Virus record (IMG/VR): IMGVR_UViG_3300017971_000001
Location: 62,001 to 126,000 of that record
DNA length: 64,000 nt
Strand: one strand, 5' to 3'
Under the pieces are notes generated by a model. That model was not told the DNA's origin. It worked only from the letters and a program-made list of their open reading frames with translations, and made no database searches. Below, in pieces: positions 23,536-45,740 of the stretch; positions within the stretch are counted from its first letter, which is position 1; each line of letters opens with the position of its first letter. Position numbers and translations under genes: made by a program.

Positions 23536-24035
23536 ATCGTCCTCATGAGGTATCCCGTCCCTTCGAACGGATCGGGGAGAAACTCAACCTTCAGAACCTG
23601 GAGGCGGACCCCTTCGTGGCGCAGGGCCGGAATTCCGCTGTGGACGAGGTCCGCGCAATGTCCGCAGAAGATAGGGTTCCTGCGGTTCCTGTGAATCCTT
23701 CGCTCGGGCTCGCGATTCATGTCGGCAATGCAGAGCTCGAACCTGCGCCAGTCGCTGTAATGAACGCGCTGGATCTTGCGGCACAACGACCAGCCGCCGT
23801 CCATTTCCGCGACCGGCTTCCTTCCAGTGACGAACTTCGTGATCCTGTATTGGAAGACGCAGGGCTGCCACGCATGGAGCTTGAAGGCGTTCGCAGTCTT
23901 TCCTTCGAGCCAGGCGACAGGGCCCTCATTGTTCAGCAGGCCCAAGCGCTCCCGCTCGAGCAGGTAGTTGAACTCGTCCTCCTTGGAGCCGGTGAGGGCG
24001 GCGCGCTCGAGTCGTAGCAGGCGTGCGTCGCTCAC
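23532..24035 (-). CDS. Hypothetical protein with SDxRLxRLER N-terminal module
   Basis: (V)SDARLLRLERAALTGSKEDEFNYLLERERLG. Confidence 0.7.
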   Translation of the reverse strand: MSDARLLRLERAALTGSKEDEFNYLLERERLGLLNNEGPVAWLEGKTANAFKLHAWQPCVFQYRITKFVTGRKPVAEMDGGWSLCRKIQRVHYSDWRRFELCIADMNREPERRIHRNRRNPIFCGHCADLVHSGIPALRHEGVRLQVLKVEFLPDPFEGTGYLMRTI

Positions 24036-25179: not shown

Positions 25180-25455
25180 CTAAGCTCCCACGTAGAGAAC
25201 TTCGACCCTGGGGCCCATGTCCTTCTCGAACTTCTTGCCGCCGTACTCGCCGAACTCGGGCGAGCCAGGGCGCTGATCGTGGGCTTCGCAGGTGTAGAAG
25301 ATCGCCTTGTGGAAGTTGTGATCGTGCGCCGCGACCACCACCGGCATGCTCTTGTCCTTGATCCCGGACAAATACTTCTCCAAGTCTCCAACGGTGTGCA
25401 TATCCTCGATCTCCTTGCTGGGTCGAATCCTATCCAGGAACTCCGACAGGTTCAA
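25180..25455 (-). CDS. Hypothetical protein
   Basis: High-GC3 ORF; start uncertain. Confidence 0.55.
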   Translation of the reverse strand: MNLSEFLDRIRPSKEIEDMHTVGDLEKYLSGIKDKSMPVVVAAHDHNFHKAIFYTCEAHDQRPGSPEFGEYGGKKFEKDMGPRVEVLYVGA

Positions 25456-28354
25456 TGAAATCCCATAAGAGCCTGCCTGTCGCTCGACCGCGCCCTTCGC
25501 CAACAGCGCCGCCGACGCCCCAGCCATTTCTCGGGAACGTGGTTCCAATGCAGTTCGAGCCCTGACCTCTTCCCGACCAGTTCCCGCGGAACGAACTGGA
25601 GACGCAGCCGAAGGCGTAAGCGGTTCCGGTCGATAGCCAGAATGGAACGCTGCCCTTAGCGCACCCCCGGCGCCTTCTTACCACCATTGAGGCAATCCCG
25701 ATTCGTGCTCCTTGTACCGCTCGAGCGGGCCACTTCTTCCCATGCCCGCCGTGAGCCCGCAGCCCAAAGAGAACCACTCCGCCCCGCGAAAGGTGCGAAG
25801 AACGCAGCCACGCGCGATCGCGAATCTGAGCGCGAGTCCGTAGGGGCTGCCGGCGCCCGATCCACACGACCCCTCCAGGCGGGAGTTTCTGGATCTTCGA
25901 CGCTTCACGGAGAGCCGCTACCTTGCATAGACGACATGCCCCAGCCAAGCCCTCTTTTGAAGTAGAAGTTGGCAGGGCCTGGGCCGCGGATTTGCCAGAT
26001 CCTGCCGGAGACGTAGCCCCGCCTACAAAAGAGCCCGCTTGACATACAGCCCCAGTGGAGGGCGGCACTCCTTCTTCTGCGCCTCACCAGTCGGACCCCA
26101 TTCCGATCCTTCGCTTGAGGCCGCGGCCCGTTGAGTAGGTGTCGGCCCAGGGCTTCGATCGGTTTGCAATCGAGGCGCTCCCGCTGGCCCGCATGCGCGT
26201 CATGGTTGACGTCCAGCGGGCAAGGAGGAACTCGTTCCCACAGGGGGATCCGCGCCCCCGGTCACCCGATCGATACGGCCGGTCGCTGCGGTGGGCGGTG
26301 TCGAGCATGATCCCGAAGCAGAGGCCGGTAAATCTTCGACGACGTTTCACGTCAACCTCGGCGGGGGTAGAAAATTGAATAGAACCTTCTGAGTCCTGAT
26401 CCGACCGCGCAGTAGTTGGACCCTCGGCCTCTGAAGCAGCCATGCCTGAACATGGCGAAGTCGCGCAACCCGCTCCCAGCGCCCCTTGAAAGCCCTCTTC
26501 TCCACATGCTCTTGCTGGAAGGCCTCCTTCGCCGTCTCATGACGACCTCCGAACTCGGAACCACTTCGCAGAACGACTCAGAGCTAGACCGAACGGGCGG
26601 CCGAGGCCATGCCCGAGCACAACCCTTGCGCGCTTCCAGCGTGTATATGAAACCAAGGACACCCGAATCCGATACTCCTGCGGAGGCCATAGCCATAGTC
26701 GTGGTGGTTGCTGTGACTATGAGTGACCAAGCCAATCCTGCGTCGACGCCTCATGAAGACCTCCGACGGAACCACTTCGCAGAGCGGCTTAAGCCTCGGC
26801 CGAACGAACGAAAGAGCCCGTAGCCCAGAACCCCCCTTGTAATCTTCCACCCCGGAAGGTCGGTGACCGGGTTACCGAAGCCGCGCTGCCTGTAGAGGCC
26901 GCAGCCGCGCTCACGAGGGTGAGTGCTGTGACCCCGGCCCTTGAGTTGAGTGATCAAGCCGGCCCTGCGTCGACGCCTCATGCAGACACTTGGATCCGCC
27001 GGACGTTTCCGGCCACCTTCCTCAGGCCGCGTCCCCAGCTGTTCGATTGGCCGTGCCCGCGCCGCCGTCTGTATCCACCAAGGTTCCTCCACCACCGAAT
27101 GCCGGCGCGGCTTGACCCGCCTCCCATTTCGCTTCGCAGTCCTGCCCCCGTCGACTTGCCGCTGCGTCGCCGAAAGACGGCTCCATGTCTTCTCCTGCGC
27201 TTCATAGGACCCAATAGGGTCCGGCGACGGACCTTCCAAAGCCGTGGCCCTTTGCCGTGCTCCACGGACCGTAGTCCCTGCCTCCGCCAAAGCTGCGAGA
27301 CTTCCCCCTCCCGAGCGCCGCCTTGGTCAAGCGCCTCCAGTTGGAAGCTGGTCTCCTCCTTCGCCTCATTGCCCGTATCCCAACCCGCCGAACAAACTCA
27401 CAAAGACGTACGGGTGGAACGGGCTCGGCACGTATCGACTGATCGCGCCGGACTTCATTGCATACCCCCTCGTCGACCAGAGCCCGCCGCCGCGGCCGAT
27501 CTTGTTCACAATCAACGCCTCGCCCCAGCGCATGCTCCAGTTGCGTGCTGTTCTTCTCCTTCGCTTCATTGAGAACGCCCGCGGAAGTGAAAAAAGGAGT
27601 GACGAATCCCTCGGCCGTACGACCGATTGGAGCCGCAGCCAGACAGTCGGATTCCATGACCAGGAACGACCAAGCACGACATGGCGAACCCCAGCCCGTA
27701 TCCACCTGCGCCGCCTCGAACCCAGACCTGCCTTCGTCTTCTGATCAAGAGAACACCCTTAGAGAGAACACCGAGCTCGAGTAGCCGCCGCAACCTCCGC
27801 CGCAGCCGAGCGCGTGGCCAATCCCAGCGCCGCACCTCGATTTCATTGAGACCAAGAGCTTGTCGCCCCACGTTGGATTGCCTCGCCCCATGTTCCGCCT
27901 TAGCCCGCTCCCGAGCCTGAGGATCTCTACGCCCTGGCCGTAGAGGCCCTGGAATCCCTTCCGGTGCCGGTGACGTCGCCTCATTGCCCGATTGGCCACC
28001 AGGCTGCCCTGTACCGCCTGAGCCCGTGTCCGCACTTCACCTTTGAGGAAATGAACGTGTCTGAACTAGGTGGCTGCCCCCTGCTGATCGAACGGCGAAT
28101 CCCGGACCCGAGGACGCGTGAAAGCGCAGGTACGAACGTGAACTTCAAGACTGAACTCCGGCGCCTCTTCATGACGGAAGCGTCTCCGGCTCCCTGAGCG
28201 AGTGACCACGGTAGACGCCTAGCCCTCGCCCGACGCTTGGCGCGTATCCGTAGCAAGAGCTCAAGCCGTAGCCGATCATGCTAAAGAGGCAGAGCGGCAG
28301 GCCGCTGATTTTCATAGTCCTTCGAAAGTAGACTTTTCGCCGAAGCCTCCTCAT
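25430..28354 (-). other. Cluster E: 14 tandem MxRRRR / Gly-rich peptide genes (one frameshifted)
   Basis: Members (-): 28169-28354, 27981-28172, 27745-27984, 27566-27748, 27366-27569, 27202-27369, 26978-27205, 26751-26981, 26537-26754 (fs), 26352-26540, 26084-26350, 25905-26087, 25678-25908, 25430-25687. Confidence 0.85.
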
Positions 28355-28524: not shown

Positions 28525-29064
28525 TCATTCAGGTGCTTCCGTGTAGGGAACGAGCTCGACGTCGTAAGGAACGTAGAGCGGGTGCTTGGGGAAGCCGGCC
28601 TTCGTGACGGCCAGCGCGCAGATCTTCTTGTGCTGCGCCTCGGGCAAGTTCTGCTTGAGACAGCGAAGGGCGCGCTTGTCCCCGAGCACCTTGTCGTCCC
28701 CGCGCCCCCAGCGACACTTCGTGCCCCAGCCGAGCACGATCCGGTCCAGGTTGGGCTGGCGCGCCGTCGTCGAGAGCACGTATTCGTTCTCGGGCCCGAA
28801 GGGGTTCTCGGCGTCCTTGAGCTCGGACGGATCGGTCGCGCGAAAGGCGAAGGCGTTGACGACGACGATCTCGCCGTAGCCCCAGCGCTTCGCGAACCCG
28901 ACGCACTTGCGGATCGTGGGGTCGTCCTTACTCGCGTCAGCCGTGCTCGGATTGAGCATGACGAACACGCAGGACGGTCGATCGAGGTCCCAGGTTCGAG
29001 AGAGTCGGTAGCGATACGTCTCGCAGCTGCTGATCCAGGCGTCCGAGGCAACGGCAGTGGTCAT
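28525..29064 (-). CDS. DUF1643 family protein
   Basis: SSC.TYRYRLSR.W......FVMLNPSTADA..DDPTIRKC.GFA..WGY....VVN.FAFRATDP and PKHPLY. Confidence 0.93.
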   Translation of the reverse strand: MTTAVASDAWISSCETYRYRLSRTWDLDRPSCVFVMLNPSTADASKDDPTIRKCVGFAKRWGYGEIVVVNAFAFRATDPSELKDAENPFGPENEYVLSTTARQPNLDRIVLGWGTKCRWGRGDDKVLGDKRALRCLKQNLPEAQHKKICALAVTKAGFPKHPLYVPYDVELVPYTEAPE

Positions 29065-30962: not shown

Positions 30963-32471
30963 TTACCGACACCGAGGGTAGTGCCTCCAGCCCGCCTTGC
31001 CCTTGCGGGAGCAGGCGCGCTCCCCCGGAGGGATCCGCCCCTTGCAGTGAATGCAGCGAATGCCGTAGTTGCCGCCGAGCGTGATCACGTTGTGATCGTC
31101 TTCGGGCGCCCCGCCAACCTCCCGGACCAACTTGCCGACGTCGTCCATGGGCTCGGTGCCGAGCGTATTCGCCTCGCTGCTGCGAACAGCGTCGTACAGC
31201 TGATCGATCAGATCAACAGCAGCCTCGAAGGAAAGCGGCAGGCTGTAGTTCTCGCCGACCAGTCGAGCGACGCCCGCAGACGATTGCACCCTGATCTTTC
31301 CCGGCTGCACGACGAAGAACGAGCCGCGGGGAGTCTTGAACTCCCTGTCTTCGTTCGCGACCTTTTCCAGGTGCAGGTTTGCCGCGTGCAGCTGCTCCTG
31401 CAGCTTGACGATCTCCGCGTTCCGGGCCTCGACCTTAGCGCTCCACTCGAGCGCGGCGTCCGCCCACTCCTTCGCGCCGAGCTCGAGCTCGCTCTTCCAC
31501 TTCAGAGCCTGGCTCGCCCAGTGCTGCTCGTCCCTGACGTAGTCTTCCCGGATCTTCGCATTCTGAGAGAGCAGGCGGCGCACTTCGTCGACGTGCTTCT
31601 CGTTACTGGTCTCGTGACCAACGGCGCACAGCCGACGTTCGAGGGCCCGAGTGCGTTCAAGCTGCCACCGCTGATTCGCTACTGCGCGCTTCCTCTCGCG
31701 GTCCAGCTGCTTGAGGGCAGCGTCGCGGTCGCCGCGCGCCTCCTCGAGGAGCGCCTTGAACATGTCGCGGCGGGACTCGGCGTGAGCGAGCTTGGCCTTG
31801 AGATTTTCGATCTCGCTCTTGGGCTCTTCTCCGGCCAGCGCGGCAGCCAGAGCGTTCCAATCGTCCCCGATAGCGCGGACCATTTCGTCCCACTGATCCT
31901 CGTGAACGTACAGCTTCCGCGGCGTTCCGAGTCCCCGCCCCCGCTCCTCGAGCCAAGCGCCGATCTTGCGCTTTCCCGACGGAAAGGCCTCTTTGTGAAT
32001 TCCAGTCACGGCCGCGGGGCACCAGTCCGACCCCGGAAAGCGGCAGAGCAAGTGGTCGCCAATCGAAACGTCCTGAAGAGGCGGCGCGCCGCAACCGCGA
32101 ACGATCAGCGGGTTCTCCCACTGCTCTTGAGCGACGGAGGTCATGACATTGTCGAAGGAGCGGAGCTCGAAGCTCACGTCGGTGTATCCGTTCACGCGGA
32201 ACAGCTTCCACTGACCCAAGACGTTGTATTCGACGACGTCGCCGACCTTGACGTCTTCCCACTTCGGAGGCTCGATCCTCTTAGGAAGGAGAACGAACCT
32301 TTCCTCAGTCGAGTGCCACCGCTTCGACTTGTCGATCGGGTCGATCAGCGTCAGGTCGCTGTTCCGCACGGTGTCCACGACCGCGATCCGCCAGCTTCTC
32401 TCCTCGGTTCGATACTTGACCCGATCGCCCGCCTTCAGGTCCCTGCCCTTGACCGTGCTCATTTGACTCAT
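30963..32471 (-). CDS. Protein with three Tudor/Agenet/SH3-like repeats and a long coiled coil
   Basis: LKAGDRVKY..E.SWRIAVV, VKVGDVVEY...GQWKLFRV, VSIGDHLLCRFPGSDWCPAAVTGI; C-terminal CxxC; ATG overlaps the stop of a peptide gene. Confidence 0.65.
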   Translation of the reverse strand: MSQMSTVKGRDLKAGDRVKYRTEERSWRIAVVDTVRNSDLTLIDPIDKSKRWHSTEERFVLLPKRIEPPKWEDVKVGDVVEYNVLGQWKLFRVNGYTDVSFELRSFDNVMTSVAQEQWENPLIVRGCGAPPLQDVSIGDHLLCRFPGSDWCPAAVTGIHKEAFPSGKRKIGAWLEERGRGLGTPRKLYVHEDQWDEMVRAIGDDWNALAAALAGEEPKSEIENLKAKLAHAESRRDMFKALLEEARGDRDAALKQLDRERKRAVANQRWQLERTRALERRLCAVGHETSNEKHVDEVRRLLSQNAKIREDYVRDEQHWASQALKWKSELELGAKEWADAALEWSAKVEARNAEIVKLQEQLHAANLHLEKVANEDREFKTPRGSFFVVQPGKIRVQSSAGVARLVGENYSLPLSFEAAVDLIDQLYDAVRSSEANTLGTEPMDDVGKLVREVGGAPEDDHNVITLGGNYGIRCIHCKGRIPPGERACSRKGKAGWRHYPRCR

Positions 32472-33232
32472 ACCCCGAATCCTCTCTCGAGGAACTGCCC
32501 GCGACCAAATTCGCGGCGTGTCCACCTGTTACCCCACCTGTCGGAAAACCTAACAACCGACAGCGACCCAAATCCAAAACGGAGACCCTCGCCGTAGCGA
32601 AAGCCTTGTCCGAACCCATTGGTCCGAACCCCCCAGCACGCCTGGTAACGCCGGCGCCTGATCACCGATTCCCGCCCGCAGCGCTGCCGACACCGACGCC
32701 GCATGCCTTGCCAAGTCCCCCCCGAGACGGAAGCGAGTTGCTGCCGCTGCCGGAGATCCTGCTCTGAGCGACTCCGAACCTCGCTCCGTTGCCAGCCGAG
32801 AACTCGACTGCGACCAAGGCCAGCCTCCTCCTCCGCGTTCTCTTCATGCGTCCTCGAAGTGCCGAATGACGAAGTGGAATCCGAGGACCCCGAAGAGGAA
32901 GCCGAACGATCGGACCGAGGCCGGAAGCACGCAGAGCATGAGCACGCACCACCAGGCTCCGATCGTGCAGATCGTGTTCACCGCTTGTTTCTGCTGAGCG
33001 GTCACGGCGAAGACCACTGCGACGAGAATTGACGGTGAACAAGGCCGCCGCCGTCGCGATAACGAAAGCTCGTGATCCCCAGGGTCCGGTACATGCCCCT
33101 GCCTCGAATGCGCGGGAAGGCCAGCTTGGCGAAGCGCCGCCCTCCAGAAGAAAAGTTGAGTCCAGATCCAATCCTCCGCCGGTGGTCCAGGGAGTACCAG
33201 AAGAAAAGCATTCGGCGCCGCCTCCTCAGCAT
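32468..33232 (-). other. Cluster F: 3 Arg-leader / Gly-rich peptide genes
   Basis: Members (-): 33002-33232, 32662-32847, 32468-32665; small TM ORF 32844-32981 in between. Confidence 0.8.
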
Positions 33233-33693
33233 TCGTCGAACGCGAATCCTCGCTCGGCTGCCCGCGCGCAGCGATCGCACTGGTAGCCGCGCTCGAGGTC
33301 CTGTCCCGTCAGGACGCCAGGGTCCTTGCACGTCGGGCAGGCGTAGACCCGCGGATTGCCGGGCCCTGCAGCACGAAGCGCCGATTCGCTGCCCGGGTCC
33401 GCAAACTCGCAGCGGTCGGCCGTGTAGTGGTTATAGGCGAGCGCGTTGTAGCAGGCCCAGCAGACCGCCTGCTCCATGAAGACGGTCACGGGCTCCTGAA
33501 CCTTGCAGCCGTAGCACCCGCCGTCGCCGAGCTCCTCGCCCGCGAAGCACTCGGGGCACTCCTCGAGCCGGATCGAATAGAGCCGGCCGCAGGCAGAGCA
33601 CTGGCTCAGCCCGCCCTCGGTAAGGGACTCGCTGTAGCCGGCGTCGTGAGCCGAGCGAAGATCGCCGGCGTCTTCGTTGTCGTAGTAGCTCAC
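33226..33693 (-). CDS. Multi-CxxC zinc-binding protein
   Basis: CSAC, CPEC, CYGC, CWAC, CPTC, CDRC. Confidence 0.75.
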   Translation of the reverse strand: MSYYDNEDAGDLRSAHDAGYSESLTEGGLSQCSACGRLYSIRLEECPECFAGEELGDGGCYGCKVQEPVTVFMEQAVCWACYNALAYNHYTADRCEFADPGSESALRAAGPGNPRVYACPTCKDPGVLTGQDLERGYQCDRCARAAERGFAFDEC

Positions 33694-33956
33694 TCTTCTT
33701 CTTCCGTGGGAACCATGAACAGCACCTGACTCTTGTTCAGGACGAAGTTGGTCCCCCCCTCGAGGGTCGTGACGTTGTCTCGCTGCCCGCGGCTGCTGTG
33801 CGTCAGGAGCGGCTCGAAGACCCCGTGCATGCCGTTCGTCCGATTCGTCGTCTCCAGGACCTGGACCTCAAGGAATCCCGAAAACTCCTTGCTGTCCCAG
33901 ACCTCCATGAGCCCGCAGAACTGAATGTGATCCCAGTTCAAAAGCTTGACGCGCAT
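33690..33956 (-). CDS. Hypothetical protein, possible Sm-like beta barrel
   Basis: C-terminal FVLNKSQVLFMVP recalls the Sm2 strand pair (compare Hfq MVYKHAISTVVP). Confidence 0.45.
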   Translation of the reverse strand: MRVKLLNWDHIQFCGLMEVWDSKEFSGFLEVQVLETTNRTNGMHGVFEPLLTHSSRGQRDNVTTLEGGTNFVLNKSQVLFMVPTEEEE

Positions 33957-34138
33957 TATTCGACTCCCTCTTCGTCGAGTTGCTTGATCGTGAGATTGAG
34001 AATGGCGCTGGATCTCGTCCAGTTGCCGCCGGGGTTCTCTGCCCTCAGACGCTCGAGATAGCGGTCGATCCGATCCGCGAGCTCGGGAGAGCAGCGAAAG
34101 CTACAGACGACCCGCTTGCCGTCCTCGTCTTCGCTCAT
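33956..34138 (-). CDS. Ribbon-helix-helix (CopG/Arc-like) regulator
   Basis: KRVVCSFRCSPELADRIDRY......TRSSAILNL; AAGGA SD; first gene of the leftward arm. Confidence 0.75.
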   Translation of the reverse strand: MSEDEDGKRVVCSFRCSPELADRIDRYLERLRAENPGGNWTRSSAILNLTIKQLDEEGVE

Positions 34139-34346
34139 TTTCGAATTCCTTTGCGTTTACCTGATCCGCCAAAGAGGACCGCACCCCTTGCGATCACGAG
34201 AGATATGTATACACGAAGAATCTCTTGTAGACAACGTCAGACTTCGCTGATATTGTTCTGCCTCGCAAGTCAAGGGGCGTCGTGTCCGGCTCCGGTGTGG
34301 TGTCGATCCTTCGCCCTCTTTCAAACGCTCAAGCAAGGAGAAAGCA
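34139..34346. promoter_or_regulatory. Divergent promoter region with paired operator-like palindromes
   Basis: Strand-switch point; TGTATACA (34206-34213) and TGTAGACA (34226-34233), 20 bp apart. Confidence 0.5.
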
Positions 34347-34748
34347 ATGAGCGACAAGCGGATTCGGGAACTGGAAAAGGCCGCGGCCGGCGGCGATACG
34401 GACGCGGCGGCTGAGCTCGAGCGCGTGCGCAGCAGGTCCTTCCAGGACCCCATGACGGCCTACTTCTCCAAGTTCATTGGGAAGGAGATCTATATCGAGG
34501 GAGCTCGCATGAACTACCTCGGCAAGCTCCTCGGCGTCGCCCAGGCGCCCGACGGCCAGCCGACCGGCCTGCTCATGTCGCCGATCCAGCGCGTCGGTGA
34601 CTGGAGCCGCACCGGCCCCGACCACGAGCACGTCATGGAAATGCCCTCGAGCGAGGAGCTCCCCGGGCTGATCCCGACGGCCGCGATCGACCAGTTCAGC
34701 GAGGCTCCGAAGGGCTGGCTGCGCCCCGTCGAGAACAACTTCGGCTAG
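34347..34748 (+). CDS. Putative Sm/LSm(Hfq)-fold protein with SDxRIRELE N-terminal module
   Basis: AAGGAG SD; very high GC3; FSKFIGKEIYIEGARMNYLGKLLGV...LLM (Sm1-like) and GLIPTAAIDQF (Sm2-like). Confidence 0.6.
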   Translation: MSDKRIRELEKAAAGGDTDAAAELERVRSRSFQDPMTAYFSKFIGKEIYIEGARMNYLGKLLGVAQAPDGQPTGLLMSPIQRVGDWSRTGPDHEHVMEMPSSEELPGLIPTAAIDQFSEAPKGWLRPVENNFG

Positions 34749-34788
34749 GCCGAGAACACAGCTTCGGTTGTCCCCCGAGGTGTCCCCT

Positions 34789-34838
34789 GAAGCGCCCGCC
34801 GGCCACGCTCCCCCTCGTGCCGGCGGGCGCTTCTCTTT
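34789..34838 (+). terminator. Intrinsic terminator / attenuator hairpin
   Basis: GAAGCGCCCGCCGG...CCGGCGGGCGCTTC followed by TCTTT, between the Sm-like gene and cluster G. Confidence 0.65.
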
Positions 34839-36378
34839 AGAAGGTATCGCATGAATCGCCGACGCAGGAACAATGCCGCCTTCGATTTCTCGCCTAAGAA
34901 TTGGCGCTGGTGTGAAGGTCTAGGCTGGGGGCTCGGACGGTCGCTGGGATCCGGAGTGAATGATTCGCGGGGAGTCGGGCAAGGATTCGCTGCATTCGAC
35001 AAACTCGAGTTCGACTACTGGCGCTGGGAGTCCATGTCCGACGAGTGTCTGGCCGGCTTTCTTGAAAGCGTTGAGTGACCCGACGCAGAAGACGAATGAT
35101 CTACTACAGCAGCGGAGTCGGCCTTATGTCCCCGCGCCGGCGAGGTGAAGGTGAACCCTGCGGCGCCGGCCTCGGCCTCGGCAGAGGAAGAGCTCTTCTT
35201 CAGGGCGGGTACGCACTCTTGCTGTTTCCACACCGACCTGAGAGCGGCTGGGGGTTGGGTGCCGACTGCGGCTGGGGTGTGGAGTATCTGTGAGGCGACG
35301 CAGGCGCGCTTATGGACGGGTTTTTAGCACCTGGCTCGGAATCGGACAGACCAGGTTCGCAGGATCTGCTCAACGCCTGGCCGTTGGGATCGGCCGGAGT
35401 GAATACATAGGGCACGGCATGGGAATCGGAATCGGGAGGGGGTCATGAAGCGAATCAGGCGACGCGGCGGCCTCTCGATCGACTTCTCGCCCAAGCGCCC
35501 GCTGGATTGTGAAGGGTGGGGCGTAAAGAGAGCGCTCGGCGCAGGGTCGGCCAGCGTCCGCGGAGTCGGTCTCATGGTCGCTGACTTCGGTTGCATTGAG
35601 TCGCTTGGGCCCTCTGTTCTTGGAGATAACTTCGAATGGCTTGGCTGGGAAGGGCTCTCAGACGAAGTGCTCCAAGCAGAGATCGAATCACTGGAGGAAT
35701 CCACTTGAGGCGGATCCGCCATGCAAGGCTTATCGGGCAGACTGGTATCGGCGTCGACTTCGGCGTGGGGACGGGCGTCGAGGACTGGCAGGAGCTCCAA
35801 ATTGGAGTCGGGGCCGGGATCTACCATTGGTGCTCCTGGCTCAGGTGGACCCAATGAAGCGAAGGAGGCGAGTCTTTTTCTTGAACACCCGGCTCGCAGG
35901 GCAGTGGAGGAGAGTCGGCGCTGGCTGTGCGAGCCTCTTCGGCAGCGGGACGCCAGGTCGGTATCAAGTCGTGCGTGGCTGGGGCCTCGGCTATGCAGAC
36001 GGTTCGAGGTAGTCATGACCAGACGGCGAAGAAGAAACGTTGGCCAAGTTGGCTGGGGGTTAGAGATCGCAGAAGGGATAGGGACGGGAGAATTCCCGCC
36101 TAATTATTCATGCGGGAGAGGACTCGACTTCGAGCATGGCTACTTCCTCCTCTAGGCGGGGCCGGGTTTCTTCCGAGGAGCGCAACTGTAATGCGTCGGC
36201 GAAGAAGGCGGGTTGTCTACTATGCAGGCGCGTCGGGCTGCATGATCGTGACCGGAAGGGCAGAGGCAAGGCCGAGAGGGTCCGGCCTTGGCTTCAATCG
36301 ATCTCCGCCCCAGCAAGGACAGCTAACGAGCGGGGGCTGGGGACTGAATGCCGACTGCGGCTGGGGACTGGAGTACCC

Positions 36379-36591
36379 ATGAGTATCAAGAAAGCCAGAC
36401 TCGATCACGCGGCGCGGAACGATCACAGTTGCTGCACCCGGCTTCCGGGCGAGAACTTCCACACAGAAGAGTGCCCGGTCTGCGGACGGCTCATGCTGGT
36501 CAGCAGGGCGCTCGTCTTCAAGTGCATGGGGATTGGGTTCTTCCTCGGCGCGTTCGCGGGCAGCGCGGTCATGGAATGGGCGACTTCGTGA
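36379..36591 (+). CDS. Small Zn-ribbon/TM protein embedded in cluster G
   Basis: MSIKKA...CPVCG...TM tail; coupled on both sides. Confidence 0.6.
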   Translation: MSIKKARLDHAARNDHSCCTRLPGENFHTEECPVCGRLMLVSRALVFKCMGIGFFLGAFAGSAVMEWATS

Positions 36592-38368
36592 CCCGAAGAA
36601 GGAGGAGGCTTATCAGCAGCGCGGCTGGCTGGTGTTGCGGAGAATTCTGCAAGCCGTTCGGCGTCGGTGTCTACACGGACATTGGAGTCGGGGCGACTAC
36701 GGACGCGGTCGGTCGAGGAACTCGATCCGCATACGGTCACGGACAGCGCAGAAAGGGCTGGTCGTGAAGCGGCGTCGGCGCATGATCAGCTGCTACAAGA
36801 TCTCAGAGCGAGGGCTCGATCGGTTCAACGGGGCGGTCAGGCACCGAAAAGGTGAGTGGGGTGGGCTGCGGTCTGCAGTAACCGCGTTCGGAAGGCTGTC
36901 GATCGTAGGCATGGGGTTCGGCCTCGGTCGAAGGAACGGATTTTTTTGGTAAGGCGAAGGAGACACTCGAGGGGTGAATGGAGATCTCGCGGAAGGGGGC
37001 TCGGACGCTACTCGATCCAGGGTCGGTGGCGTTTCTACTACCCGCCCATTTACCCCTACCGCGCCCTCCCCAGGGGAGTCGAAATCGCCGCAGCCGTTGG
37101 CTGGGGCGCGGGTCACGCCAATGGATACGGTGGACGCAGGCGGTCGCATTGAAGAGGAAGAGGCACAACCGATCGCTTGGATTCTACCTCGGGTCGTCTG
37201 GGGCCGGCGGTCCACGCCACAGACGGCGCCGCCCGAAGGGCCGAGTCTACGGAGCCGGTTTCAGAATCTCCATTGCGTGGGGCAGTCTGGGAGGCGCTCC
37301 CTGCGTAGTGTCCGGAGGGCTCGGTTACTCGGTCGGCACCGCAGGAAACAGGCACCCTTCCTGCGAATTTGGGTTCGGTTTGAACTGCTTGTCATGAAGC
37401 GACCGCGACGACGATACCGAGTCCCCGACGTTCACCTCCCGCTCGAGCTCGACGCGTTCGGCTGGGGACTGCGCTGCTTCGGGCAAACTCGCTGGGACTG
37501 GTTCGACGAGCTCGTGGTTGGAGGGCTGGGCTTGAGGCGAAAGACAGGCGCCGGTCAACGGCGCTGCGCAGGCGTTCACCACAGGCCAGACGAGTGGCCG
37601 CCGAGATCGCACGAGGTCATTTTCTAAATGAAGAGATCGAGGCGGAGGTATCGCGTTCACGACGCAAACTCGTTCGGCCAGCCTGACTCCTACGGCTGGG
37701 CCATGGACGGATTCGGTCAGCTGGACTGGCGCTGGTACGACCCCATGTATGTCGAGGGGAGGGGCCTCGGGCGGAAGTTGGGAGACGGGCTGTGGTATGG
37801 AGCGGGGGCGTCTCGACTCAACCGGCGCTACACGCTCATGTACGAGGGGCCTGAATGAGAAGGCGGCGCAGAATGCCCCAGATTCGATTCAACTGCCCTG
37901 AGTCCGCAGGGTTCGGGCTGAATGAATCGGGCTTGAATTCGTGGTGGTCTCGTCAGCCTCCGCGGGGAAGCGGGCTATGGCTGCCGGTAGGGCTGGCGTG
38001 CTGGTCATGAAGCGTCGTCGACGGATCGGCAACCCCTGCTGCAGCCACATGCGTGGATACGGCCTGAGGAAAACGCTGAGCGTTGGGCTCTGTCCTTTGG
38101 TCTGGGATCGATTGAAGTCCCTTGAATCGGGGCGAGGTTTGGTCCACGCGTTCGGCTGGGGGATCGAATGAAGCGCAGGCGGAAATGCAGGCGGCCGAAG
38201 AGGTTCGTCTCGACGGGGCTCACTCCCTATCACTGGATCAACCTCGAGCGAGGCGTTGGGCTAAGGTGTTTTGTTGGGTCCGGGGTCATATCCTCTTGGG
38301 GTGACTATGTGATCGGCAGGAACCCCTCTCAAGCATGAAGTGAAACGCACAAACAAGGAGGAACTGGA

Positions 38369-38791
38369 ATGACGAAAGCGAACAAAGAGGTCCCCGGGGA
38401 TCTCGCGAAATTGATCCACTGCTACACCGGGCCGGGGGTCGCCCTCTACGCTCAGACGCAGCGAGGCGAGAAGAGCCGGCTGCCGAGGGAGCGCCTGGAG
38501 GAACTCGTCGAGGAGGGTTGGCTCTCGGCTCACGATCGATCGTTCGCTGAAGGCTGGGACGGGGAAGAGGAAGAGATCGCTCCCGAGTTCGAAGACGGGA
38601 GGTGGTGGAACCCCGGCACCGGCGACGAGATCCCCGCCGAGAAAGTCTACCGCTCCTACCTGACTCTTCCGGCGGCCCACGAAACGCACGCAGCAAAGCT
38701 GGCTCGACTCGAGCGCCTGCGGAGCCGAGTCCGCGAGACGCTCGACGAGATCGCCGCCCTGGAGCAAGAACTCGGAATTCAGGGCGAGTGA
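38369..38791 (+). CDS. Hypothetical protein embedded in cluster G
   Basis: AAGGAGG SD, high GC3. Confidence 0.75.
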   Translation: MTKANKEVPGDLAKLIHCYTGPGVALYAQTQRGEKSRLPRERLEELVEEGWLSAHDRSFAEGWDGEEEEIAPEFEDGRWWNPGTGDEIPAEKVYRSYLTLPAAHETHAAKLARLERLRSRVRETLDEIAALEQELGIQGE

Positions 38792-41094
38792 GGCGGCACA
38801 GACTGCGATTCTGCAGACGGAAAGACGCTGGCGTCGGACTGCGCTACGCCATGAGCGGCATGCAGCACTTCGCGCCGCACCCATTCATGCTCGTGAGGTT
38901 GCACGTCATTGGACGAGGGGTCGGACGAGGCTATGTGGGCCAGGACGCGTCCCTGCGGCCCGATCCGAGCCGCGCCCTGAGGCGGGGCGTATGAGCCGTC
39001 GTCGCAGAACCTTCTGGCTCTTTGTGGACGGAGGTCTGGGCAAGGGCCTGGGCGACAACCACGCCGCCGGCGCCGAGTGCGACGCGTGGGAGCTCGGCGA
39101 ACTCGGGTTCGACATTGACCTCCCCTTCGAGGGAAGCGGGCTGCGCCGATCGTGCGGCTGGGGAATCGAGGGGCTGGGTCCGTGGTGAGGCGGCGCAAGC
39201 GAAGGAAGTGGTTCTTCACGGACGCCGGCGTCGGGCGCGGGGCTCAGGCCCGCCACGGAATTGGACTTGAGTACATGCCCTCGTCCATGGAAGGGTGCGG
39301 GCTGTGGCGCCCTTGGGCTGGGGGAACGAATGAGGCGGAGAAGAAGGCCGGCGGGCGTCATTTCGGACGAACTCATGATCGGACTCGGGCTGGGCGACGA
39401 GATCGGCGGCGGTCAGTTCTGGGGAGCCGGGATCGGTTTGCGCCGTGGCTGGGGATCGTGGCGATCCAAGTCGGTCGCCCTGGAGGCCTTTGCTCTATGA
39501 GGCGACGCAGGAGAGTGAAGACCGGCATGCTTTGGGACTGGGAGATTGGAGTCGGGCTCGAGGGGACGGGCGGATTGCTCAATTACGCGCACGGCCTGCT
39601 GAGTTACATGTCGACCGCTTGGATCAGCTACAGCGGGCGAGGTGATTGCCGCGGGCTCGGTGAAGGAGATCCGCGTTGAAGCGAGGAAGGCGAGTGAAGA
39701 CCGGGATCCTCCATTCGAAGGAAATCTCCGCGGGAATGATCAGTTACCAATGTATCCATTACGGAAGAGGGCTTAGGAACCACCTATCCCCTTGGCGCAC
39801 ATTCTTCTATCGAAGCCGTGGGCTTGGTAAATGGTGAGGCGCAGGCGACTGGCAATCCTCGGCCTCGATAGCATGGAGGCCGTCGCCCTCATGACGGGAG
39901 AGGGCAAGATTGCGCCAGCCGACGAGCTCGGCGGCGAGGTCGGATACGGTCTGCTGGTCGAGGCTGGCTACGGTCACGCGACGACCAAAGGGAATAGCTA
40001 TCTGCGCTGCACGGGACGAGGTTTGAGGAAGAGCGTGTCTGGAGGCATTCGATCATGGTAAGGCGGAGGCGAAGGCTGAACTCCGGTTACTACTGGGGCG
40101 TCGCCGGGGCCGGGTTCGGCCGGCTGGTTGGCTGGGGGGCCTCTATCGCAATTGGGGAATCCGCAGAGCGCAACGTGGGAATCGGTGTCGGCGGTGGCGT
40201 CATGCCTTCCGGCGCTGCTTTGATCGACGCGGGGTGGCGGTGGTAAAGAGGCGTCGGCGCAGGCCGTTACCTGCGATCATTTTCTGCGCCGCTGGCGCAG
40301 GAGCGAACACCCACTCGGAATTCAATCGGCGGGACTTTGGCCTGGGGCAGCAGTCAGAGATCGGGTTCGCAAGAACGGGTCGAGACTCGTGCCTGGGCGG
40401 GGCCGGTTTCTCGGTATCGATCGGAGCAGGGATCGTCTCCGGGGCCGGGAAGGCCCTCACCGGTCACTACTGGGGGTACCTGTGAAAAGGCGGCGCAGGA
40501 CCATTCTCTCGAGCTTCTGCAGCTGGTTCTATCCGAAGCGGCGGGTCATGGGGCGAGGCCGCAGGCGGTACGTTGGAACCGGCCGGAACAAGCGGCCTGG
40601 GGTGCCTACGGCCTGGGGCGACGGGCAGTATCAGTGCCTCGCGATCGGCGTCGATCGAGCCACGGGCTTCGGGCGGGGGTCCTTTCATTGAGACGGCGCC
40701 GCTACCGCATTCACTACACTCGCTACCTCCAGCGCGGAGGGCCCTACCGCGGCTGCGGTCAAACGTTCTGCGTCGGCGTCTCGAACCTCGACTTCTTCAG
40801 GATCGGATCTGGAATGGGCTGCGGTAGAGAGTCGGGTCGCGCACAGCAGCGAGACGTCGGCGGGTCGTTCCAATGAATCGGCGCCGTAGGCGGCGGGCGG
40901 TTCAAACTCCGTTCTTTGGTCCCTGCTCTTCAGGGCTGCGGCGAATCACAGGAGCCGCCATTACCGGGAGGTTTCATTACCGATACGTTGCTGGCTGCGG
41001 AGTTGGTGTATGCTTCGCGCGCCCTCCGAACCTAAGATCCTTCCAATTCACCCCCTGGCCGATCTCTGGCCGCCGCCCTAGTTAGGAGAGCCGC

Positions 41095-41601
41095 ATGGCT
41101 GACGAAGGATTCCGCGAACTTCACCGAGACCTGGCACGCGCCGTGCCGAGCATGTCCCTCGACAAACTCGCTTACATGGCGATCACGATCAACGACGCTC
41201 TGATCGAAGCCTACCTCGAAGGGCATTCCTGGGAGTCCGTCTTGGGCCACCTCTCGCAAGGGAATCAGGATCGGACGCGGGCGGGGTGCGCTTCGATCTG
41301 GCAGATTCCCGAGGAAGAGGTTCGCTTCAGGCATGTGATCGTTCCTGGACCCGGGCACCTCGGCCTCGCGAGCGGAATCGGGCCTGCGACCATGACCAAC
41401 CTGTTCAGCGCGATCGAAAAAGCCGGGCTCATGGACGTCCGCTGGGAAGAGTGGGCCTCCCGGCTATACAGCCGGATCGACCGCGAGCGAAGGCTTGAGG
41501 CGCGAAAGAACGTGGCCAAAGAAGGGTTCACGGGTGATTGCTACCACCTGCTCGGACAGCCCTTGTGGTGGGTCGTCGCGCGCAAGTCGGGGGTCGTGTG
41601 A
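41095..41601 (+). CDS. Hypothetical protein
   Basis: AGGAG SD, 168 aa. Confidence 0.7.
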   Translation: MADEGFRELHRDLARAVPSMSLDKLAYMAITINDALIEAYLEGHSWESVLGHLSQGNQDRTRAGCASIWQIPEEEVRFRHVIVPGPGHLGLASGIGPATMTNLFSAIEKAGLMDVRWEEWASRLYSRIDRERRLEARKNVAKEGFTGDCYHLLGQPLWWVVARKSGVV

Positions 41602-42116
41602 TCCTTCCGCAAGCCGTCAACCAGTTGGACTGGGGCCCCGTAGAGGTGGTCGCCAATCTCCTGTTCGTCGAGGTCGAGCGCAGCGTCGATTTCGACAAGG
41701 CACGCTGGGACGGCCGCGTGATCCGCACGGACTATCCGGTCGACGCCCTGCACGACCTTGCCCATTTCCAGGTCGCACCCGCCTGGCGCCGAAAGCGCGT
41801 CGGGTTTGGGCTTGGCCTCGAGCCGACCGGGGGGAACGCCTATGCACCTTCCCTCGCCAGCAACGACCGCGCGATCGCCGAAGAAGAACTCGCGTCCATG
41901 CTCGGATTGATCTGGGCCTGCGAGCTCGGTTACGAGTGGAAGAAAGAGGCCTGCGAGCACTCATGGTGCGTCGAGGGCGTAGAGCACCCGGCCGCGCTCA
42001 GCCTCGGCCACAGCGACAAGCTGGACGCAATCGGCGTCACCAAGGACGGCGGAATCAACTGGCCGCCTCGCTGCGCCCGGCCCTGGCGATCCTCGGACTT
42101 CTGGCAGGCCGGCTAG
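41598..42116 (+). CDS. Metal-binding protein resembling the EF-P hydroxylase (EpmC/YfcM)-like family
   Basis: ALHDLAHFQVAPAWRRKRVGFGLG...EEELAS.LG parallels the LHEIAHW..A...RR...DFG motif. Confidence 0.45.
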   Translation: MILPQAVNQLDWGPVEVVANLLFVEVERSVDFDKARWDGRVIRTDYPVDALHDLAHFQVAPAWRRKRVGFGLGLEPTGGNAYAPSLASNDRAIAEEELASMLGLIWACELGYEWKKEACEHSWCVEGVEHPAALSLGHSDKLDAIGVTKDGGINWPPRCARPWRSSDFWQAG

Positions 42117-44418: not shown

Positions 44419-44767
44419 GCGCTTGATCCTGACCGGACGATCGCAGGTCCTGCAACTCGCTGTCAGCGAGCTCGTCAAGGAGGCGCGAAGCCTCGGCGTC
44501 GCAGCCGCCGTAGAGGTGCATGAGAACGAAGGTCATGCTCTCAGCGATCCCGCCCCAGACCACCAAGTCGGCGCTGAAGTCCCAAACGTCCTCCAGCAAC
44601 TCTCTGCGCTCTTGCTGCTCCTCCAGCGCCTCGGTCCGCGGGAGCTCGCGTGCCCGACGGGCGAACCGTCGGAGGGTGAGGCAGAACTCGTACTCGAGCT
44701 CGCCCGGCTTGGGGCCGTTTGTGTCGCGATCAGGATTCGGCGCCTTCCCCACGCTCACCCTCGTCAA
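44411..44767 (-). CDS. Hypothetical protein
   Basis: ORF in chain; start uncertain. Confidence 0.55.
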   Translation of the reverse strand: MTRVSVGKAPNPDRDTNGPKPGELEYEFCLTLRRFARRARELPRTEALEEQQERRELLEDVWDFSADLVVWGGIAESMTFVLMHLYGGCDAEASRLLDELADSELQDLRSSGQDQAHE

Positions 44768-45740
44768 TCTCGTCTGCCAACATGTTTCCGATCGCGCCCG
44801 CCTCGTCTCGGCGGTTGTCGTCGTATCGAATGAGCGTCTCGACGCTCTTGTGACGTGAGAACTTCTGGACGCGACGGACGTCGCCGTTGAGCCGGTCGAG
44901 CGCGCGCGTGATCGCAGCGTGTCGCAAGCCGTGCGGCCAGGTGTCGAGACCAGCGTTCTTGCCGATCTTCTTGACGATTTTGTGGACCGATCGCCCAGTG
45001 AGCCGCCCGTCGGAGCGGCGGCCGGCGCGATCGTAGGATTCGAACAGGGCGCCCGGGTGACTGCCGCGGCGCGCGATCCAGTCCCGCAGCGCCTCTGCCG
45101 TGCTCTCGGGGATCGTGACCTTGCGGCGCGCCTTGTCCCGCTTACCCAAGATCATGACGGTCTTCCGCTTGAGGTCAACGTGCTTCATGTCGAGGCCGAC
45201 GACCTCAAACCGACGCAGAGCCATGTCGTAGAGCATGCGCAGGATCGCGTAGTTGCGCCGGTCGAGATTGGAGTCGCCGAGCGTGCCGAGCATTTTGAGG
45301 AACCCGTCGTGGCCGGGGCCGCGGGTGTCCTTGTAGGTGTCGTTGCTGACGTTGGTGACGTCCAGCTGGTAGTTGCAGATCCCGAGCGTGTTGGCGAGCT
45401 TGATCATGCTGCGCAGCGCGGCGATCCGCCGGTTGACGGTGCCGGGTGCGTAGCTCTTCTCGTCGACCATGTATTGCTGGAACTCGAGGACGAGGTAGTT
45501 CGCGTCGCCGCGTCCCACGCTGAGCAGGGAGGCCGCGGCTTCGTCTACGGTCTCCACGCCCAGCCACTCGCAGAACACGCGAAGGTCACGCTGATAAGCG
45601 TCGACGGTGTTCTTGGACTTGTTGCGGAAGAAGGCCTGGATCAACTTTTCACTGTCTGATCCGGCCAACTTGTCGCGCACGGCGGGAGGCTGCGCGGCGC
45701 GTTTGGAGAGTTGCGTCTTCGGCTTGGCAGGCAGATCCAT
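44730..45740 (-). CDS. Tyrosine recombinase (XerC/D-like integrase/resolvase)
   Basis: SAM-like N-terminus (SKNTVDAYQRDL); LRRFEV (R), GKRDK (K), HGLRH, SRHKS..TL.RYDD (H, Y). Confidence 0.95.
   Translation of the reverse strand: MDLPAKPKTQLSKRAAQPPAVRDKLAGSDSEKLIQAFFRNKSKNTVDAYQRDLRVFCEWLGVETVDEAAASLLSVGRGDANYLVLEFQQYMVDEKSYAPGTVNRRIAALRSMIKLANTLGICNYQLDVTNVSNDTYKDTRGPGHDGFLKMLGTLGDSNLDRRNYAILRMLYDMALRRFEVVGLDMKHVDLKRKTVMILGKRDKARRKVTIPESTAEALRDWIARRGSHPGALFESYDRAGRRSDGRLTGRSVHKIVKKIGKNAGLDTWPHGLRHAAITRALDRLNGDVRRVQKFSRHKSVETLIRYDDNRRDEAGAIGNMLADEIDEGERGEGAES

What the first reader, a model, noticed from the sequence alone, without database searches (positions are those of the whole stretch)
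33690..35078. Putative Sm/Hfq-fold gene heads the largest peptide array at the divergent control point
Seen: the first gene of the rightward arm (34347-34748) has a strong SD and very biased codons. It carries an Sm1-like FIGKEIYIE....YLGKLLGV segment and an Sm2-like LIPTAAIDQF, and is followed by a terminator hairpin and then 29 Arg/Gly peptides. On the other side lie an RHH regulator and a second possible Sm-like ORF (33690-33956). Established: Sm/LSm/Hfq folds form RNA-binding rings. From memory and unverified, small phage Sm-like genes (DUF6948-like) often sit next to Gly- or Ser/Arg-rich low-complexity ORFs. Inference: an abundant ring scaffold plus many low-abundance variable peptides made by terminator read-through, forming a two-part programmable module.
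Basis: inference. Interest (0 to 1): 0.75.

Follow-up and report, generated by a model that had tools for sequence, protein, structure and literature searches.

The report
Phage Sm-fold gene heading microprotein array
A 245-kb phage from marine sediment carries a strongly conserved, probably highly expressed gene for an Sm/LSm-fold protein that, here and in distant relatives, sits directly in front of fast-evolving arrays of tiny arginine/glycine-rich proteins: a gene partnership not found described in the literature searched, whose function is still unknown.

Summary
ORF A (34347-34748, 133 aa) is a real gene. It has an AAGGAG ribosome-binding site and GC3 of 0.91, which ranks 10th of 274 genes.

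- **Fold.** With 38 homologues, AlphaFold2 gives a confident model (pLDDT 93.9). It has an N-terminal helical hairpin, then a helix and a bent beta-sheet. Almost all top structural matches are Sm/LSm/Hfq proteins (Z 9.8 to SmAP1). No Pfam, NCBIfam or PHROG family matches, so this is an unannotated Sm-like family.
- **Hairpin.** A GC-rich hairpin follows the gene. It is conserved in a related phage, with a compensatory change.
- **Array.** About 28 (not 29) small ORFs starting M-(K/R)-RRRR follow. They are joined by NTGA overlaps, share a GxGLxRxxGxG motif and are under purifying selection (pN/pS 0.44).
- **Linkage.** In 9 of 11 independent homologue loci, a basic, Gly-rich small ORF lies immediately downstream or within about 180 nt. 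In 162 kb of control viral DNA there were none.
- **Related phage.** The Sm domain is 98% identical there. The array peptides are 34-77% identical (global alignment) and number 17 instead of 28.

Not supported: ORF B (33690-33956) as a second Sm-like protein. Its models are of low confidence and it evolves fast. The RHH call rests on sequence pattern only. Ring formation, peptide binding and terminator read-through are untested.

The parts
34347..34748 (+). ORF A, 133 aa. Aa 1-31 form a helical-hairpin leader (MSDxRxRELExAA..GD..A). Aa 34-122 form the Sm/LSm-fold domain (helix 35-41, strands 47-52, 56-66, 72-83, 107-110, 114-119).
   Evidence: Coding statistics. 46 HMMER hits and alignment A1. 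AF2 pLDDT 93.9. Sm/LSm top hits in PDB, AFDB and the ESM atlas. pN/pS 0.19 in the Sm domain against L036.
34335..34340 (+). Shine-Dalgarno AAGGAG, 6 nt before the ORF A start codon.
   Evidence: Read from the sequence. Identical in L036.
34139..34346 (.). Divergent intergenic control region. It holds a sigma-70-like site at 34228-34256 (+) and an inverted repeat at 34196-34204 / 34220-34228 around a TGTATACA palindrome.
   Evidence: It is 97% identical to L036, while synonymous sites of the flanking genes differ by 17-39%.
34789..34840 (+). Intrinsic-terminator-like hairpin. The arms are 34789-34803 and 34819-34833, followed by a U-rich tail. It lies between ORF A and the first peptide gene.
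   Evidence: It is conserved in L036, with a compensatory G:C to A:U change and a U8 tail. Termination activity was not tested.
34851..41085 (+). Array of about 28 small ORFs (46-87 aa), each starting M-(K/R/N/T)-RRRR and carrying GxG(L)x(R)xxGxG motifs. Most are joined by 4-nt NTGA overlaps. Two non-peptide ORFs are embedded (36379-36591, 38369-38791).
   Evidence: Orthologues in L036 give pN/pS 0.44.
33956..34138 (-). 60-aa ORF, first gene of the leftward arm. The sequence pattern is RHH-like (a short strand, two helices, a G-N-W-T-R-S turn). No family match.
   Evidence: It is 96.7% identical in L036, with pN/pS 0.06.
33690..33956 (-). ORF B, 88 aa. A real gene of unknown fold, predicted all-beta. 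It evolves fast.
   Evidence: Codon statistics. No homologues by word search. ESM model pLDDT 0.52 with non-Sm neighbours. AF2 single-sequence pLDDT 43.5. 52.5% identity with an insertion in L036.
33226..33693 (-). 155-aa Cys-rich ORF, zinc-ribbon-like. It is coupled by overlaps to ORF B upstream and to a peptide ORF downstream.
   Evidence: Weak zf-ChsH2 hit at E 0.003, below the Pfam cut-off. 74.8% identity in L036.
32468..33232 (-). Three R-run/Gly microprotein ORFs on the leftward arm (32468-32665, 32662-32847, 33002-33232).
   Evidence: Orthologues exist in L036.
41095..42116 (+). Two conventional genes (168 and 172 aa) that end the rightward operon. No family match.
   Evidence: They are 88.7% and 90.1% identical in L036.

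Best explanation
**What is shown**
- ORF A encodes a highly codon-optimised, strongly conserved protein with an Sm/LSm fold. A helical hairpin precedes the Sm domain.
- It is the lead cistron of an operon whose remaining roughly 6 kb encode a chain of about 28 fast-evolving basic microproteins. Each has an N-terminal Arg run and Gly-x-Gly motifs.
- The link between the Sm-like gene and such microproteins is old and specific. It recurs in phage contigs with GC from 51% to 69%.

**What is inferred**
- The microproteins are translated mainly by termination-reinitiation at NTGA overlaps.
- In this phage lineage, a conserved hairpin with a U-tract behind ORF A lowers transcription into the array. 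That would give much Sm-like protein and little of each peptide.
- The Sm-like protein assembles into a ring, as most Sm proteins do. It acts as the common partner of the microproteins, binding or chaperoning their conserved part while their variable parts differ, probably on nucleic acid.
For: **Fold**
- AF2 gives pLDDT 93.9 and pTM 0.75.
- Foldseek against PDB: the top 50 are almost all Sm/LSm, with probability 1.0 and TM by target 0.7-0.8.
- VIA-align gives Z 9.8 to SmAP1 (1loj), covering 75 of 76 residues, and about 45 of the top 50 hits are Sm/LSm/Hfq.
- AFDB and the ESM atlas agree.

**Expression signals**
- AAGGAG site, GC3 0.91, rank 10-18 of 274 genes.

**Conservation**
- There are 46 homologues, about 38 of them full-length with the same leader-plus-domain architecture.
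- Against the related phage L036, the Sm domain is 98/100 identical with pN/pS 0.19.

**Linkage**
- Nine of 11 independent loci (window/L036, L003, L004, L005, L006, L009/10, L032, L033/34, L035) have a basic-N-terminal, Gly-rich small ORF directly downstream. Most overlap the Sm gene's stop by 4 nt or start within 3 nt. In L004 the downstream peptide starts 177 nt later and another ends 13 nt upstream.
- No such ORF occurs in 162 kb of 19 unrelated viral loci.
- Several contigs carry ordinary genes for 2-10 kb upstream and break inside the first peptide.

**The peptides are real genes**
- The Arg run uses all six Arg codons, and 90 of 99 starts are NTGA.
- 59 of 82 junctions overlap by 4 nt.
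- The G.G.....G.G motif occurs 101 times against 6 expected.
- pN/pS is 0.44 over 845 codons.

**Conserved partner, variable peptides**
- Peptide orthologues are 34-77% identical over their full length, and the array has 28 units here against 17 in L036.
- Peptide codon usage is flat, with 34-44% AGR Arg codons against 11% in normal genes.

**Hairpin**
-. It is conserved with a compensatory change.
Against: - No oligomer, peptide-binding or RNA-binding computation was possible, so the functional half is pure inference.
- The residues that bind uridine in canonical Sm proteins are not conserved. By my mapping from secondary structure, the family consensus at the strand 4-5 turn is P-W rather than R-G. 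No LSM or Hfq profile matches.
- Some LSm domains (EDC3, LSm14, Gemin6/7) do not form rings.
- The genome holds about 100 peptide genes in at least 8 arrays, but only one full ORF A and one leaderless paralogue, so pairing is not one-to-one.
- Two homologue loci (L007, L008) and the paralogue have no adjacent peptide.
- The terminator is absent where peptides overlap the Sm gene in other phages.
- Charge complementarity is weak: the Sm family has median net charge -2, the peptides +10.
Confidence: 0.45

Rival explanations
1. ORF A is an Hfq-like RNA chaperone or regulator that works on RNA alone, either host or phage transcripts and possibly the G-rich array mRNA itself. It sits before the array only because it regulates that operon. 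There is no physical contact with the peptides.
For: Sm fold, with SmAP1 bound to UMP as the best match and Hfq at Z about 7. The gene is highly expressed and sits at a regulatory node next to a constrained intergenic region.
Against: Canonical U-binding residues are not conserved and no LSM or Hfq profile matches. The family is mildly acidic, with median pI 5.9. Tight translational coupling to the next peptide in seven or more loci points to co-production of the proteins.
Confidence: 0.22
2. The peptides are toxic, membrane-active or nucleic-acid-condensing effectors. ORF A is their chaperone or antidote and keeps them harmless or soluble in the producing cell, in the way of an immunity protein or a histone chaperone.
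For: The peptides are extremely basic (median +10, pI 11.7), while ORF A and most of its homologues are acidic to neutral. The antidote-like gene comes first, is better expressed and is more conserved. The effectors diversify quickly.
Against: One ORF A would have to cover about 100 different peptides in eight arrays. No similarity to any known toxin or immunity family. The net charge of ORF A is only -5.
Confidence: 0.15
3. The adjacency has no functional meaning. The arrays are rapidly expanding, weakly selected 'filler' genes that tend to grow downstream of a strongly expressed gene, and ORF A has an unrelated job.
For: The peptides have flat codon usage, raised synonymous divergence (pS 0.58 against 0.17-0.37) and frequent gain and loss. 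Other arrays in this genome follow other genes.
Against: The same pairing recurs in 9 of 11 loci across GC 51-69%, with none in controls. The peptides are under purifying selection and keep a motif.
Confidence: 0.12
4. The peptides are virion-internal, DNA-neutralising proteins, in the way of protein J of Microviridae or protamine-like core peptides. The Sm-like ring takes part in their loading or in packaging.
For: The N-terminal poly-Arg tract and the small size. Hfq rings can bind phage neck proteins in vitro (PDB 9lu5 appears among the fold hits).
Against: The locus lies among small early-type and accessory genes, far from the tail-fibre genes at 1-6 kb of the genome. Nothing links it to capsid genes.
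Confidence: 0.06

Closest known systems
Archaeal Sm proteins (SmAP1) and eukaryotic Sm/LSm proteins
   Same: The predicted fold: an N-terminal helix and a five-stranded bent beta-sheet. Z is 8-9.8 and nearly the whole target is covered. The hydrophobic/Gly pattern of strands 1-2 resembles the Sm1 motif.
   Different: No profile match to PF01423. An extra N-terminal helical hairpin and a long strand 3-4 insertion. The Sm2 R-G turn and the loop-3 Asp/Asn are not kept. Phage-encoded. Ring formation and RNA binding are unknown.
Bacterial Hfq and phage Hfq-like proteins (PF23874)
   Same: A small Sm-fold protein in a bacterial or phage setting, probably abundant.
   Different: Weaker structural match (Z 6.5-7.2). 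No Pfam match. A Phage_Hfq cluster appears only at rank 70 of the ESM feature hits.
Eukaryotic Sm core with Arg/Gly-rich tails (SmB, SmD1, SmD3, LSm4) and peptide-binding LSm domains (EDC3, LSm14, Gemin6/7)
   Same: An Sm-fold unit working together with Arg/Gly-rich, low-complexity polypeptide. LSm domains can also bind short peptides. From established knowledge, with these proteins among the fold hits.
   Different: Here the Arg/Gly-rich parts are separate gene products, about 100 of them. The resemblance is an analogy, not shown homology or shown binding.
Pfam DUF6948
   Same: The same broad fold class. Three DUF6948 proteins appear among the BFVD hits (ranks 27-33).
   Different: No sequence match at E <= 1 for ORF A or any of its 37 homologues. 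The structural scores are weak (E about 0.04, TM 0.35-0.53).
Arginine-rich-motif peptides of lambdoid phages (N proteins)
   Same: Small, basic, probably disordered phage proteins with an Arg-rich tract at the very N-terminus, encoded next to a terminator. From established knowledge.
   Different: No sequence similarity. N is a single gene, not about 100 paralogues. No boxB-like elements were looked for or seen.
MnxE/MnxF subunits of the Bacillus Mnx complex (PDB 9bxa_B)
   Same: The best Foldseek E-value (2.9e-4, 22-26% identity over 78-105 columns). Small accessory subunits.
   Different: No profile-level sequence match. An unrelated operon context, with no multicopper oxidase nearby.

Membership tests
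Sm/LSm superfamily | Fold: N-terminal alpha-helix followed by five strongly bent antiparallel beta-strands | tested here: met
   AF2 model with pLDDT 93.9. Sm/LSm proteins dominate the PDB, AFDB and ESM-atlas hits.
Sm/LSm superfamily | Sequence-profile match to LSM (PF01423), SM-ATX or Hfq models | tested here: not met
   hmmscan at E <= 1 gives none, either for ORF A or for any of the 38 members of A1. No PDB sequence hit with the A1 profile.
Sm/LSm superfamily | Nucleotide-binding residues: Asp/Asn in loop 3 and Arg-Gly in the Sm2 turn | tested here: not met
   By mapping A1 onto the model's strands, the strand 4-5 turn has P-T in ORF A and P-W in the family consensus, and loop 3 reads A-P-D-G-Q. 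The mapping comes from secondary structure, not from a residue-level superposition.
Sm/LSm superfamily | Homo- or hetero-oligomeric ring of 5-8 subunits | not testable with these tools
   Only monomer prediction was available. Tandem two-domain homologues exist (P0010, P0038), which is weakly suggestive.
Sm/LSm superfamily | Binds single-stranded RNA | not testable with these tools
   This needs an experiment.
Pfam DUF6948 | Match to the family HMM | tested here: not met
   No hit at E <= 1. Only weak fold neighbours.
Ribbon-helix-helix regulators (CopG/Arc/MetJ), for ORF 33956-34138 | Match to an RHH family, or a strand-helix-helix fold | tested here: inconclusive
   No Pfam, NCBIfam, PHROG or PDB match. 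No alignment to an Arc-family protein. The sequence pattern is compatible.
Sm-like fold, for ORF B 33690-33956 | N-terminal helix and bent five-stranded sheet | tested here: inconclusive
   AF2 single-sequence pLDDT 43.5. ESM model pLDDT 0.52, with its nearest shapes not Sm. No N-terminal helix is predicted.
Intrinsic (Rho-independent) terminator | GC-rich stem-loop followed by a U-tract | tested here: met
   The stem is kept through a compensatory change, and the U-tract is longer in L036.
Intrinsic (Rho-independent) terminator | Transcripts end there, with partial read-through | not testable with these tools
   No RNA run was listed.

The most novel reading that the evidence does not exclude
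The Sm-like ring and the roughly 100 diversifying Arg-run/Gly-motif microproteins form a two-part system. A constant oligomeric core docks interchangeable small adaptor peptides whose variable segments set the target, which could be RNA, DNA or host proteins. That would be a protein-based combinatorial targeting or condensate-forming system in large phages, kept diverse by rapid birth, death and divergence of array units.
Probability: 0.15. Interest if true: 0.9.

Novelty: new variant of a known kind. Interest (0 to 1): 0.7.

Why it matters
Sm/LSm/Hfq proteins are central organisers of RNA biology in all domains of life. Phage-encoded versions are hardly studied.

This work defines an unannotated phage Sm-like family that a language-model search and fold searches can see but profile libraries cannot. 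Its genomic partner is unusual: arrays of translationally coupled microprotein genes that make up roughly a fifth of the gene count of a 245-kb phage.

If the two parts work together, it would be a new way for a virus to combine one conserved scaffold with a fast-evolving peptide repertoire. Even if they do not, three things are useful facts for phage annotation, where such ORFs are usually dismissed:
- The microproteins are real, selected genes.
- They are chained by NTGA overlaps over 6 kb.
- They break metagenome assemblies.

Tried and rejected
- **Family libraries.** Pfam, PHROGs, NCBIfam and PADLOC scans of ORF A, ORF B, the RHH-like ORF, the Zn-ribbon ORF and peptides found nothing useful.
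- **Word-based homologue search.** For both ORF A and ORF B it found only the query itself. Only the exhaustive HMMER search found the ORF A family.
- **Related loci.** With the single proteins it found no relatives in IMG/VR.
- **EGARMNY pattern scans.** In IMG/VR the scan gave 21 stretches. Two were real, and one of those was the same phage's paralogue. In 185k prokaryote genomes it gave 119 stretches, none real.
- **Two-unit R-run pattern.** In IMG/VR and in metagenomes it returned only purine-rich false positives. How widespread the arrays are therefore remains unknown.
- **Reading the Arg run as an RNA or DNA motif.** I rejected this reading (SD-like or Hfq A-R-N sites, or a CRISPR-like repeat). 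All six Arg codons are used with near-random third positions, and AGR enrichment is almost as high elsewhere in the peptides.
- **Rfam.** No match in 32-42 kb.
- **5' UTR of ORF A.** It is not unusually structured.
- **RNA evidence.** None was listed.
- **ESM atlas on a peptide.** Poorly recognised, with no lead.
- **Literature.** Five searches found no description of this family, of DUF6948, or of such arrays.
Full report
**Setting.** The window is bases 62001-126000 of a 245,276-bp virus record with direct terminal repeats, rated 100% complete. GC is about 62%. The same DNA is held by marine and sediment metagenome runs, and no RNA run was listed. The phage is tailed, with collagen-like tail-fibre genes and helicases elsewhere in the genome. 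GC skew changes sign near 34 kb. Every called gene from 751 to 34138 lies on the - strand, and those from 34347 to 42116 lie on the + strand. So 34139-34346 is a true divergent point.

**Is ORF A a gene?** Yes.
- The frame-1 codon score is 0.51 and all five other frames are negative.
- GC at codon positions 1, 2 and 3 is 0.64, 0.46 and 0.91, the pattern of the phage's long genes.
- It ranks 18th of 274 genes of at least 80 aa by codon score and 10th by GC3.
- AAGGAG lies 6 nt before the ATG.

ORF B, the RHH-like ORF and the Cys-rich ORF at 33226-33693 are also clearly coding.

**Fold of ORF A.**
- No Pfam, PHROG, NCBIfam or PADLOC family matches, and the word-indexed search found only ORF A itself.
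- The exhaustive HMMER search found 46 proteins. About 38 are full-length (108-169 aa) with the same two-part build. The first part is an N-terminal leader, MSDxxxRxxxRxA..GD..A. The second is a domain with consensus G..VY.EGARMNYRG.L..V...G.P..L...P..RVG.W...GP...P...PW..V...G..P..W.
- With that alignment, AlphaFold2 gives pLDDT 93.9 and pTM 0.75. The model has helices at 2-14 and 18-31 (a hairpin) and at 35-41, then strands at 47-52, 56-66, 72-83, (96-99), 107-110 and 114-119.
- Foldseek against PDB returns almost only Sm/LSm proteins: SmAP1, LSm657, SmD3/B and LSm1-7. Probability is 1.0 and TM by target is 0.7-0.8.
- The Foldseek-independent aligner gives Z 9.8 to SmAP1 (1loj) over 75 of 76 residues. 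About 45 of the top 50 entries are Sm, LSm or Hfq.
- AFDB clusters, the ESM atlas and BFVD agree. They also show large unnamed viral clusters of the same shape.

By my mapping, the residues that bind uridine in canonical Sm proteins are not kept. The strand 4-5 turn is P-T, or P-W in the family, instead of R-G. Membership is therefore at the level of fold, not of any described family. DUF6948 is only a distant fold neighbour and has no HMM match.

**The leader.** The first roughly 30 residues are a module found at the N-terminus of about 22 genes of this phage, and as internal repeats in some large metagenomic proteins. In the related phage it takes 9 of ORF A's 11 amino-acid changes. Its role is unknown.

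**The hairpin.** A stem with 15-nt arms, at 34789-34803 and 34819-34833, is followed by TCTCTTTA (z -3.1). In the related phage L036 the stem is kept through a G:C to A:U double change, and the tail is U8. This supports a functional RNA hairpin. Termination itself is untested.

**The peptides.** The genome has about 99 ORFs of 46-93 aa that start M-(K/R)-RRRR. They lie in at least eight arrays between 51 and 103 kb, with two small ones beyond. The rightward arm has 28. They are protein-coding, not a nucleic-acid repeat:
- The Arg run is written with all six Arg codons and near-random third positions.
- Codon periodicity continues downstream of the Arg run.
- 90 of 99 starts read NTGA, so the start overlaps the previous stop.
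- 59 of 82 junctions are 4-nt overlaps.
- They share a motif, GxG(L)x(R)xxGxG, seen 101 times against 6 expected (z 38). It usually lies near residue 15-25 and again near 38-53.
- Their codon usage is flat, with GC at the three codon positions 0.56, 0.61 and 0.69, and 34-44% AGR Arg codons against 11% in normal genes.
- Median net charge is +10.

**A related phage.**
- Laying contigs of other runs on the locus revealed a 15.9-kb contig that is collinear but patchy. I fetched it as L036.
- Flanking genes are conserved: ORF A 91.7% (Sm domain 98/100, pN/pS 0.19), the RHH-like ORF 96.7% (pN/pS 0.06), and the two genes after the array 89-90%.
- ORF B is only 52.5% identical and carries an insertion.
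- The intergenic region is 97% identical, more conserved than synonymous sites, so it is densely functional.
- The array has 17 units there against 28 here. Fourteen orthologous pairs were aligned: twelve from the rightward array and two from the leftward arm.
- These collinear orthologues are 34-77% identical over their full length, or 44-89% in local BLASTP alignments. Pooled pS is 0.58, pN 0.25 and pN/pS 0.44.
- The peptides are therefore selected genes that diverge several times faster than their neighbours and are gained and lost as units.

**Is the pairing general?** I examined eleven independent homologue loci.
- Nine have a basic-N-terminal, Gly-rich small ORF directly after the Sm-like gene. 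In L003, L005, L006, L009/10, L032, L033 and L035 it overlaps the stop or starts within 3 nt. Examples of their starts are MRRRRRIRVGRGFGRGFG, VRRRRRGLQFGFDSGFGRGFG and VKRKSAGLVAWYSYWYGVVGG.
- In L004 (GC 51%) the Sm-like gene is flanked by six such ORFs.
- Several contigs show ordinary genes for 2-10 kb upstream and then end inside the first peptide. This suggests the Sm-like gene often heads an array that breaks the assembly.
- L007 and L008 lack a peptide. So does this phage's own leaderless paralogue at genome 153485-153820.
- Nineteen unrelated viral loci (162 kb, GC 32-70%) contain no such ORF.

**What this means.**
- Shown: an Sm-fold, well-expressed, strongly constrained lead gene; a conserved hairpin; a coupled, fast-evolving microprotein array; and a conserved gene partnership.
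- Inferred: a ring, a physical or functional partnership with the peptides, and dosage control by the hairpin.
- The dosage idea fits the codon bias and the conserved hairpin. It cannot be general, because most relatives couple the first peptide directly to the Sm gene.
- Rivals: an RNA-only Hfq-like role, a chaperone or antidote for toxic basic peptides, chance hitch-hiking, and a virion-internal role. Each is given with its tests in the Rival explanations section.

**ORF B and the RHH-like ORF.**
- ORF B has no detectable homologue beyond L036. Its two models are of low confidence, no N-terminal helix is predicted, and its nearest shapes are not Sm. The claim is unsupported.
- The 60-aa ORF is highly conserved and well placed for an autoregulator. 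An inverted repeat around TGTATACA lies 60 nt away. No RHH family matches it, however.

**Novelty.** Five literature searches found no description. The protein is a new, unannotated branch of a known fold. The partnership with microprotein arrays appears undescribed.

Noticed in passing
window 1386-3508, 6900-10439, 11734-12650, 17406-18899, 21057-21242, 25430-28354 (all -); genome 51.3-55.6 kb, 146.8-147.3 kb, 175.8-176.4 kb: At least seven further arrays of the same R-run/Gly microprotein genes, about 99 genes in all. They sit between ordinary small genes and are headed by genes other than ORF A.
   Followed up: partly
window 23532-24035 (-), 62163-62753 (-), and about 20 genes elsewhere in the genome: An N-terminal module, MSDxRLRELERAAAxGDxxA, predicted as a helical hairpin in ORF A. 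It starts about 22 otherwise unrelated proteins of this phage and recurs as internal repeats in large metagenomic proteins. Its function is unknown; it could be a docking or targeting tag.
   Followed up: partly
window 51948-54032 (-): A 694-aa protein with a Cas12f1-like TNB domain (Pfam E 8.6e-13), so a TnpB/Cas12-like nuclease gene in the phage.
   Followed up: no
genome 55227-55615 (-), outside the window: Two R-run peptides carry FSKFIGK-h-h-Y-x-EG, the same seven residues as the helix/strand-1 junction of ORF A. 19 of 21 nucleotides are identical there. This could be a shared fragment or chance.
   Followed up: partly
genome 153485-153820 (-), outside the window (also L013): A leaderless paralogue of the Sm-like domain (111 aa, 46% identity over aa 43-126). 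It lies directly upstream of a 533-aa gene with no Pfam match and has no adjacent peptide ORF.
   Followed up: partly
window 39185-39679 (+): An R-run ORF that does not stop at the usual junction and overlaps the next two peptide ORFs in another frame. This may be a frameshifted or decaying array unit.
   Followed up: no
window 34851-41085 against L036 4012-7381: Synonymous divergence inside the array (pS 0.58) is well above that of the flanking genes (0.17-0.37). The array region changes faster at all sites, not only at the protein level.
   Followed up: partly
window 58354-58426 and 58584-58657 (+): tRNA-Thr(UGU) and tRNA-Glu(UUC) genes. No tRNA-Arg or tRNA-Gly was found in the window, despite the Arg/Gly-rich arrays that use rare AGR codons.
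   Followed up: no
window 3505-3990, 5086-5595, 28525-29064, 44730-45740, 50357-51160, 55702-56436 (all -): Recognisable accessory genes: cpYpsA SLOG, dihydrofolate reductase, DUF1643, tyrosine integrase, MT-A70 methyltransferase, and DUF3310 with a PRA-PH/MazG-like domain.
   Followed up: no
window 36379-36591 and 33226-33693; L004 1162-1491 and 3038-3469: Small Cys-rich, zinc-ribbon-like ORFs are embedded in or next to the peptide arrays, both in this phage and in the distant L004 contig. They could be a third recurrent component.
   Followed up: no
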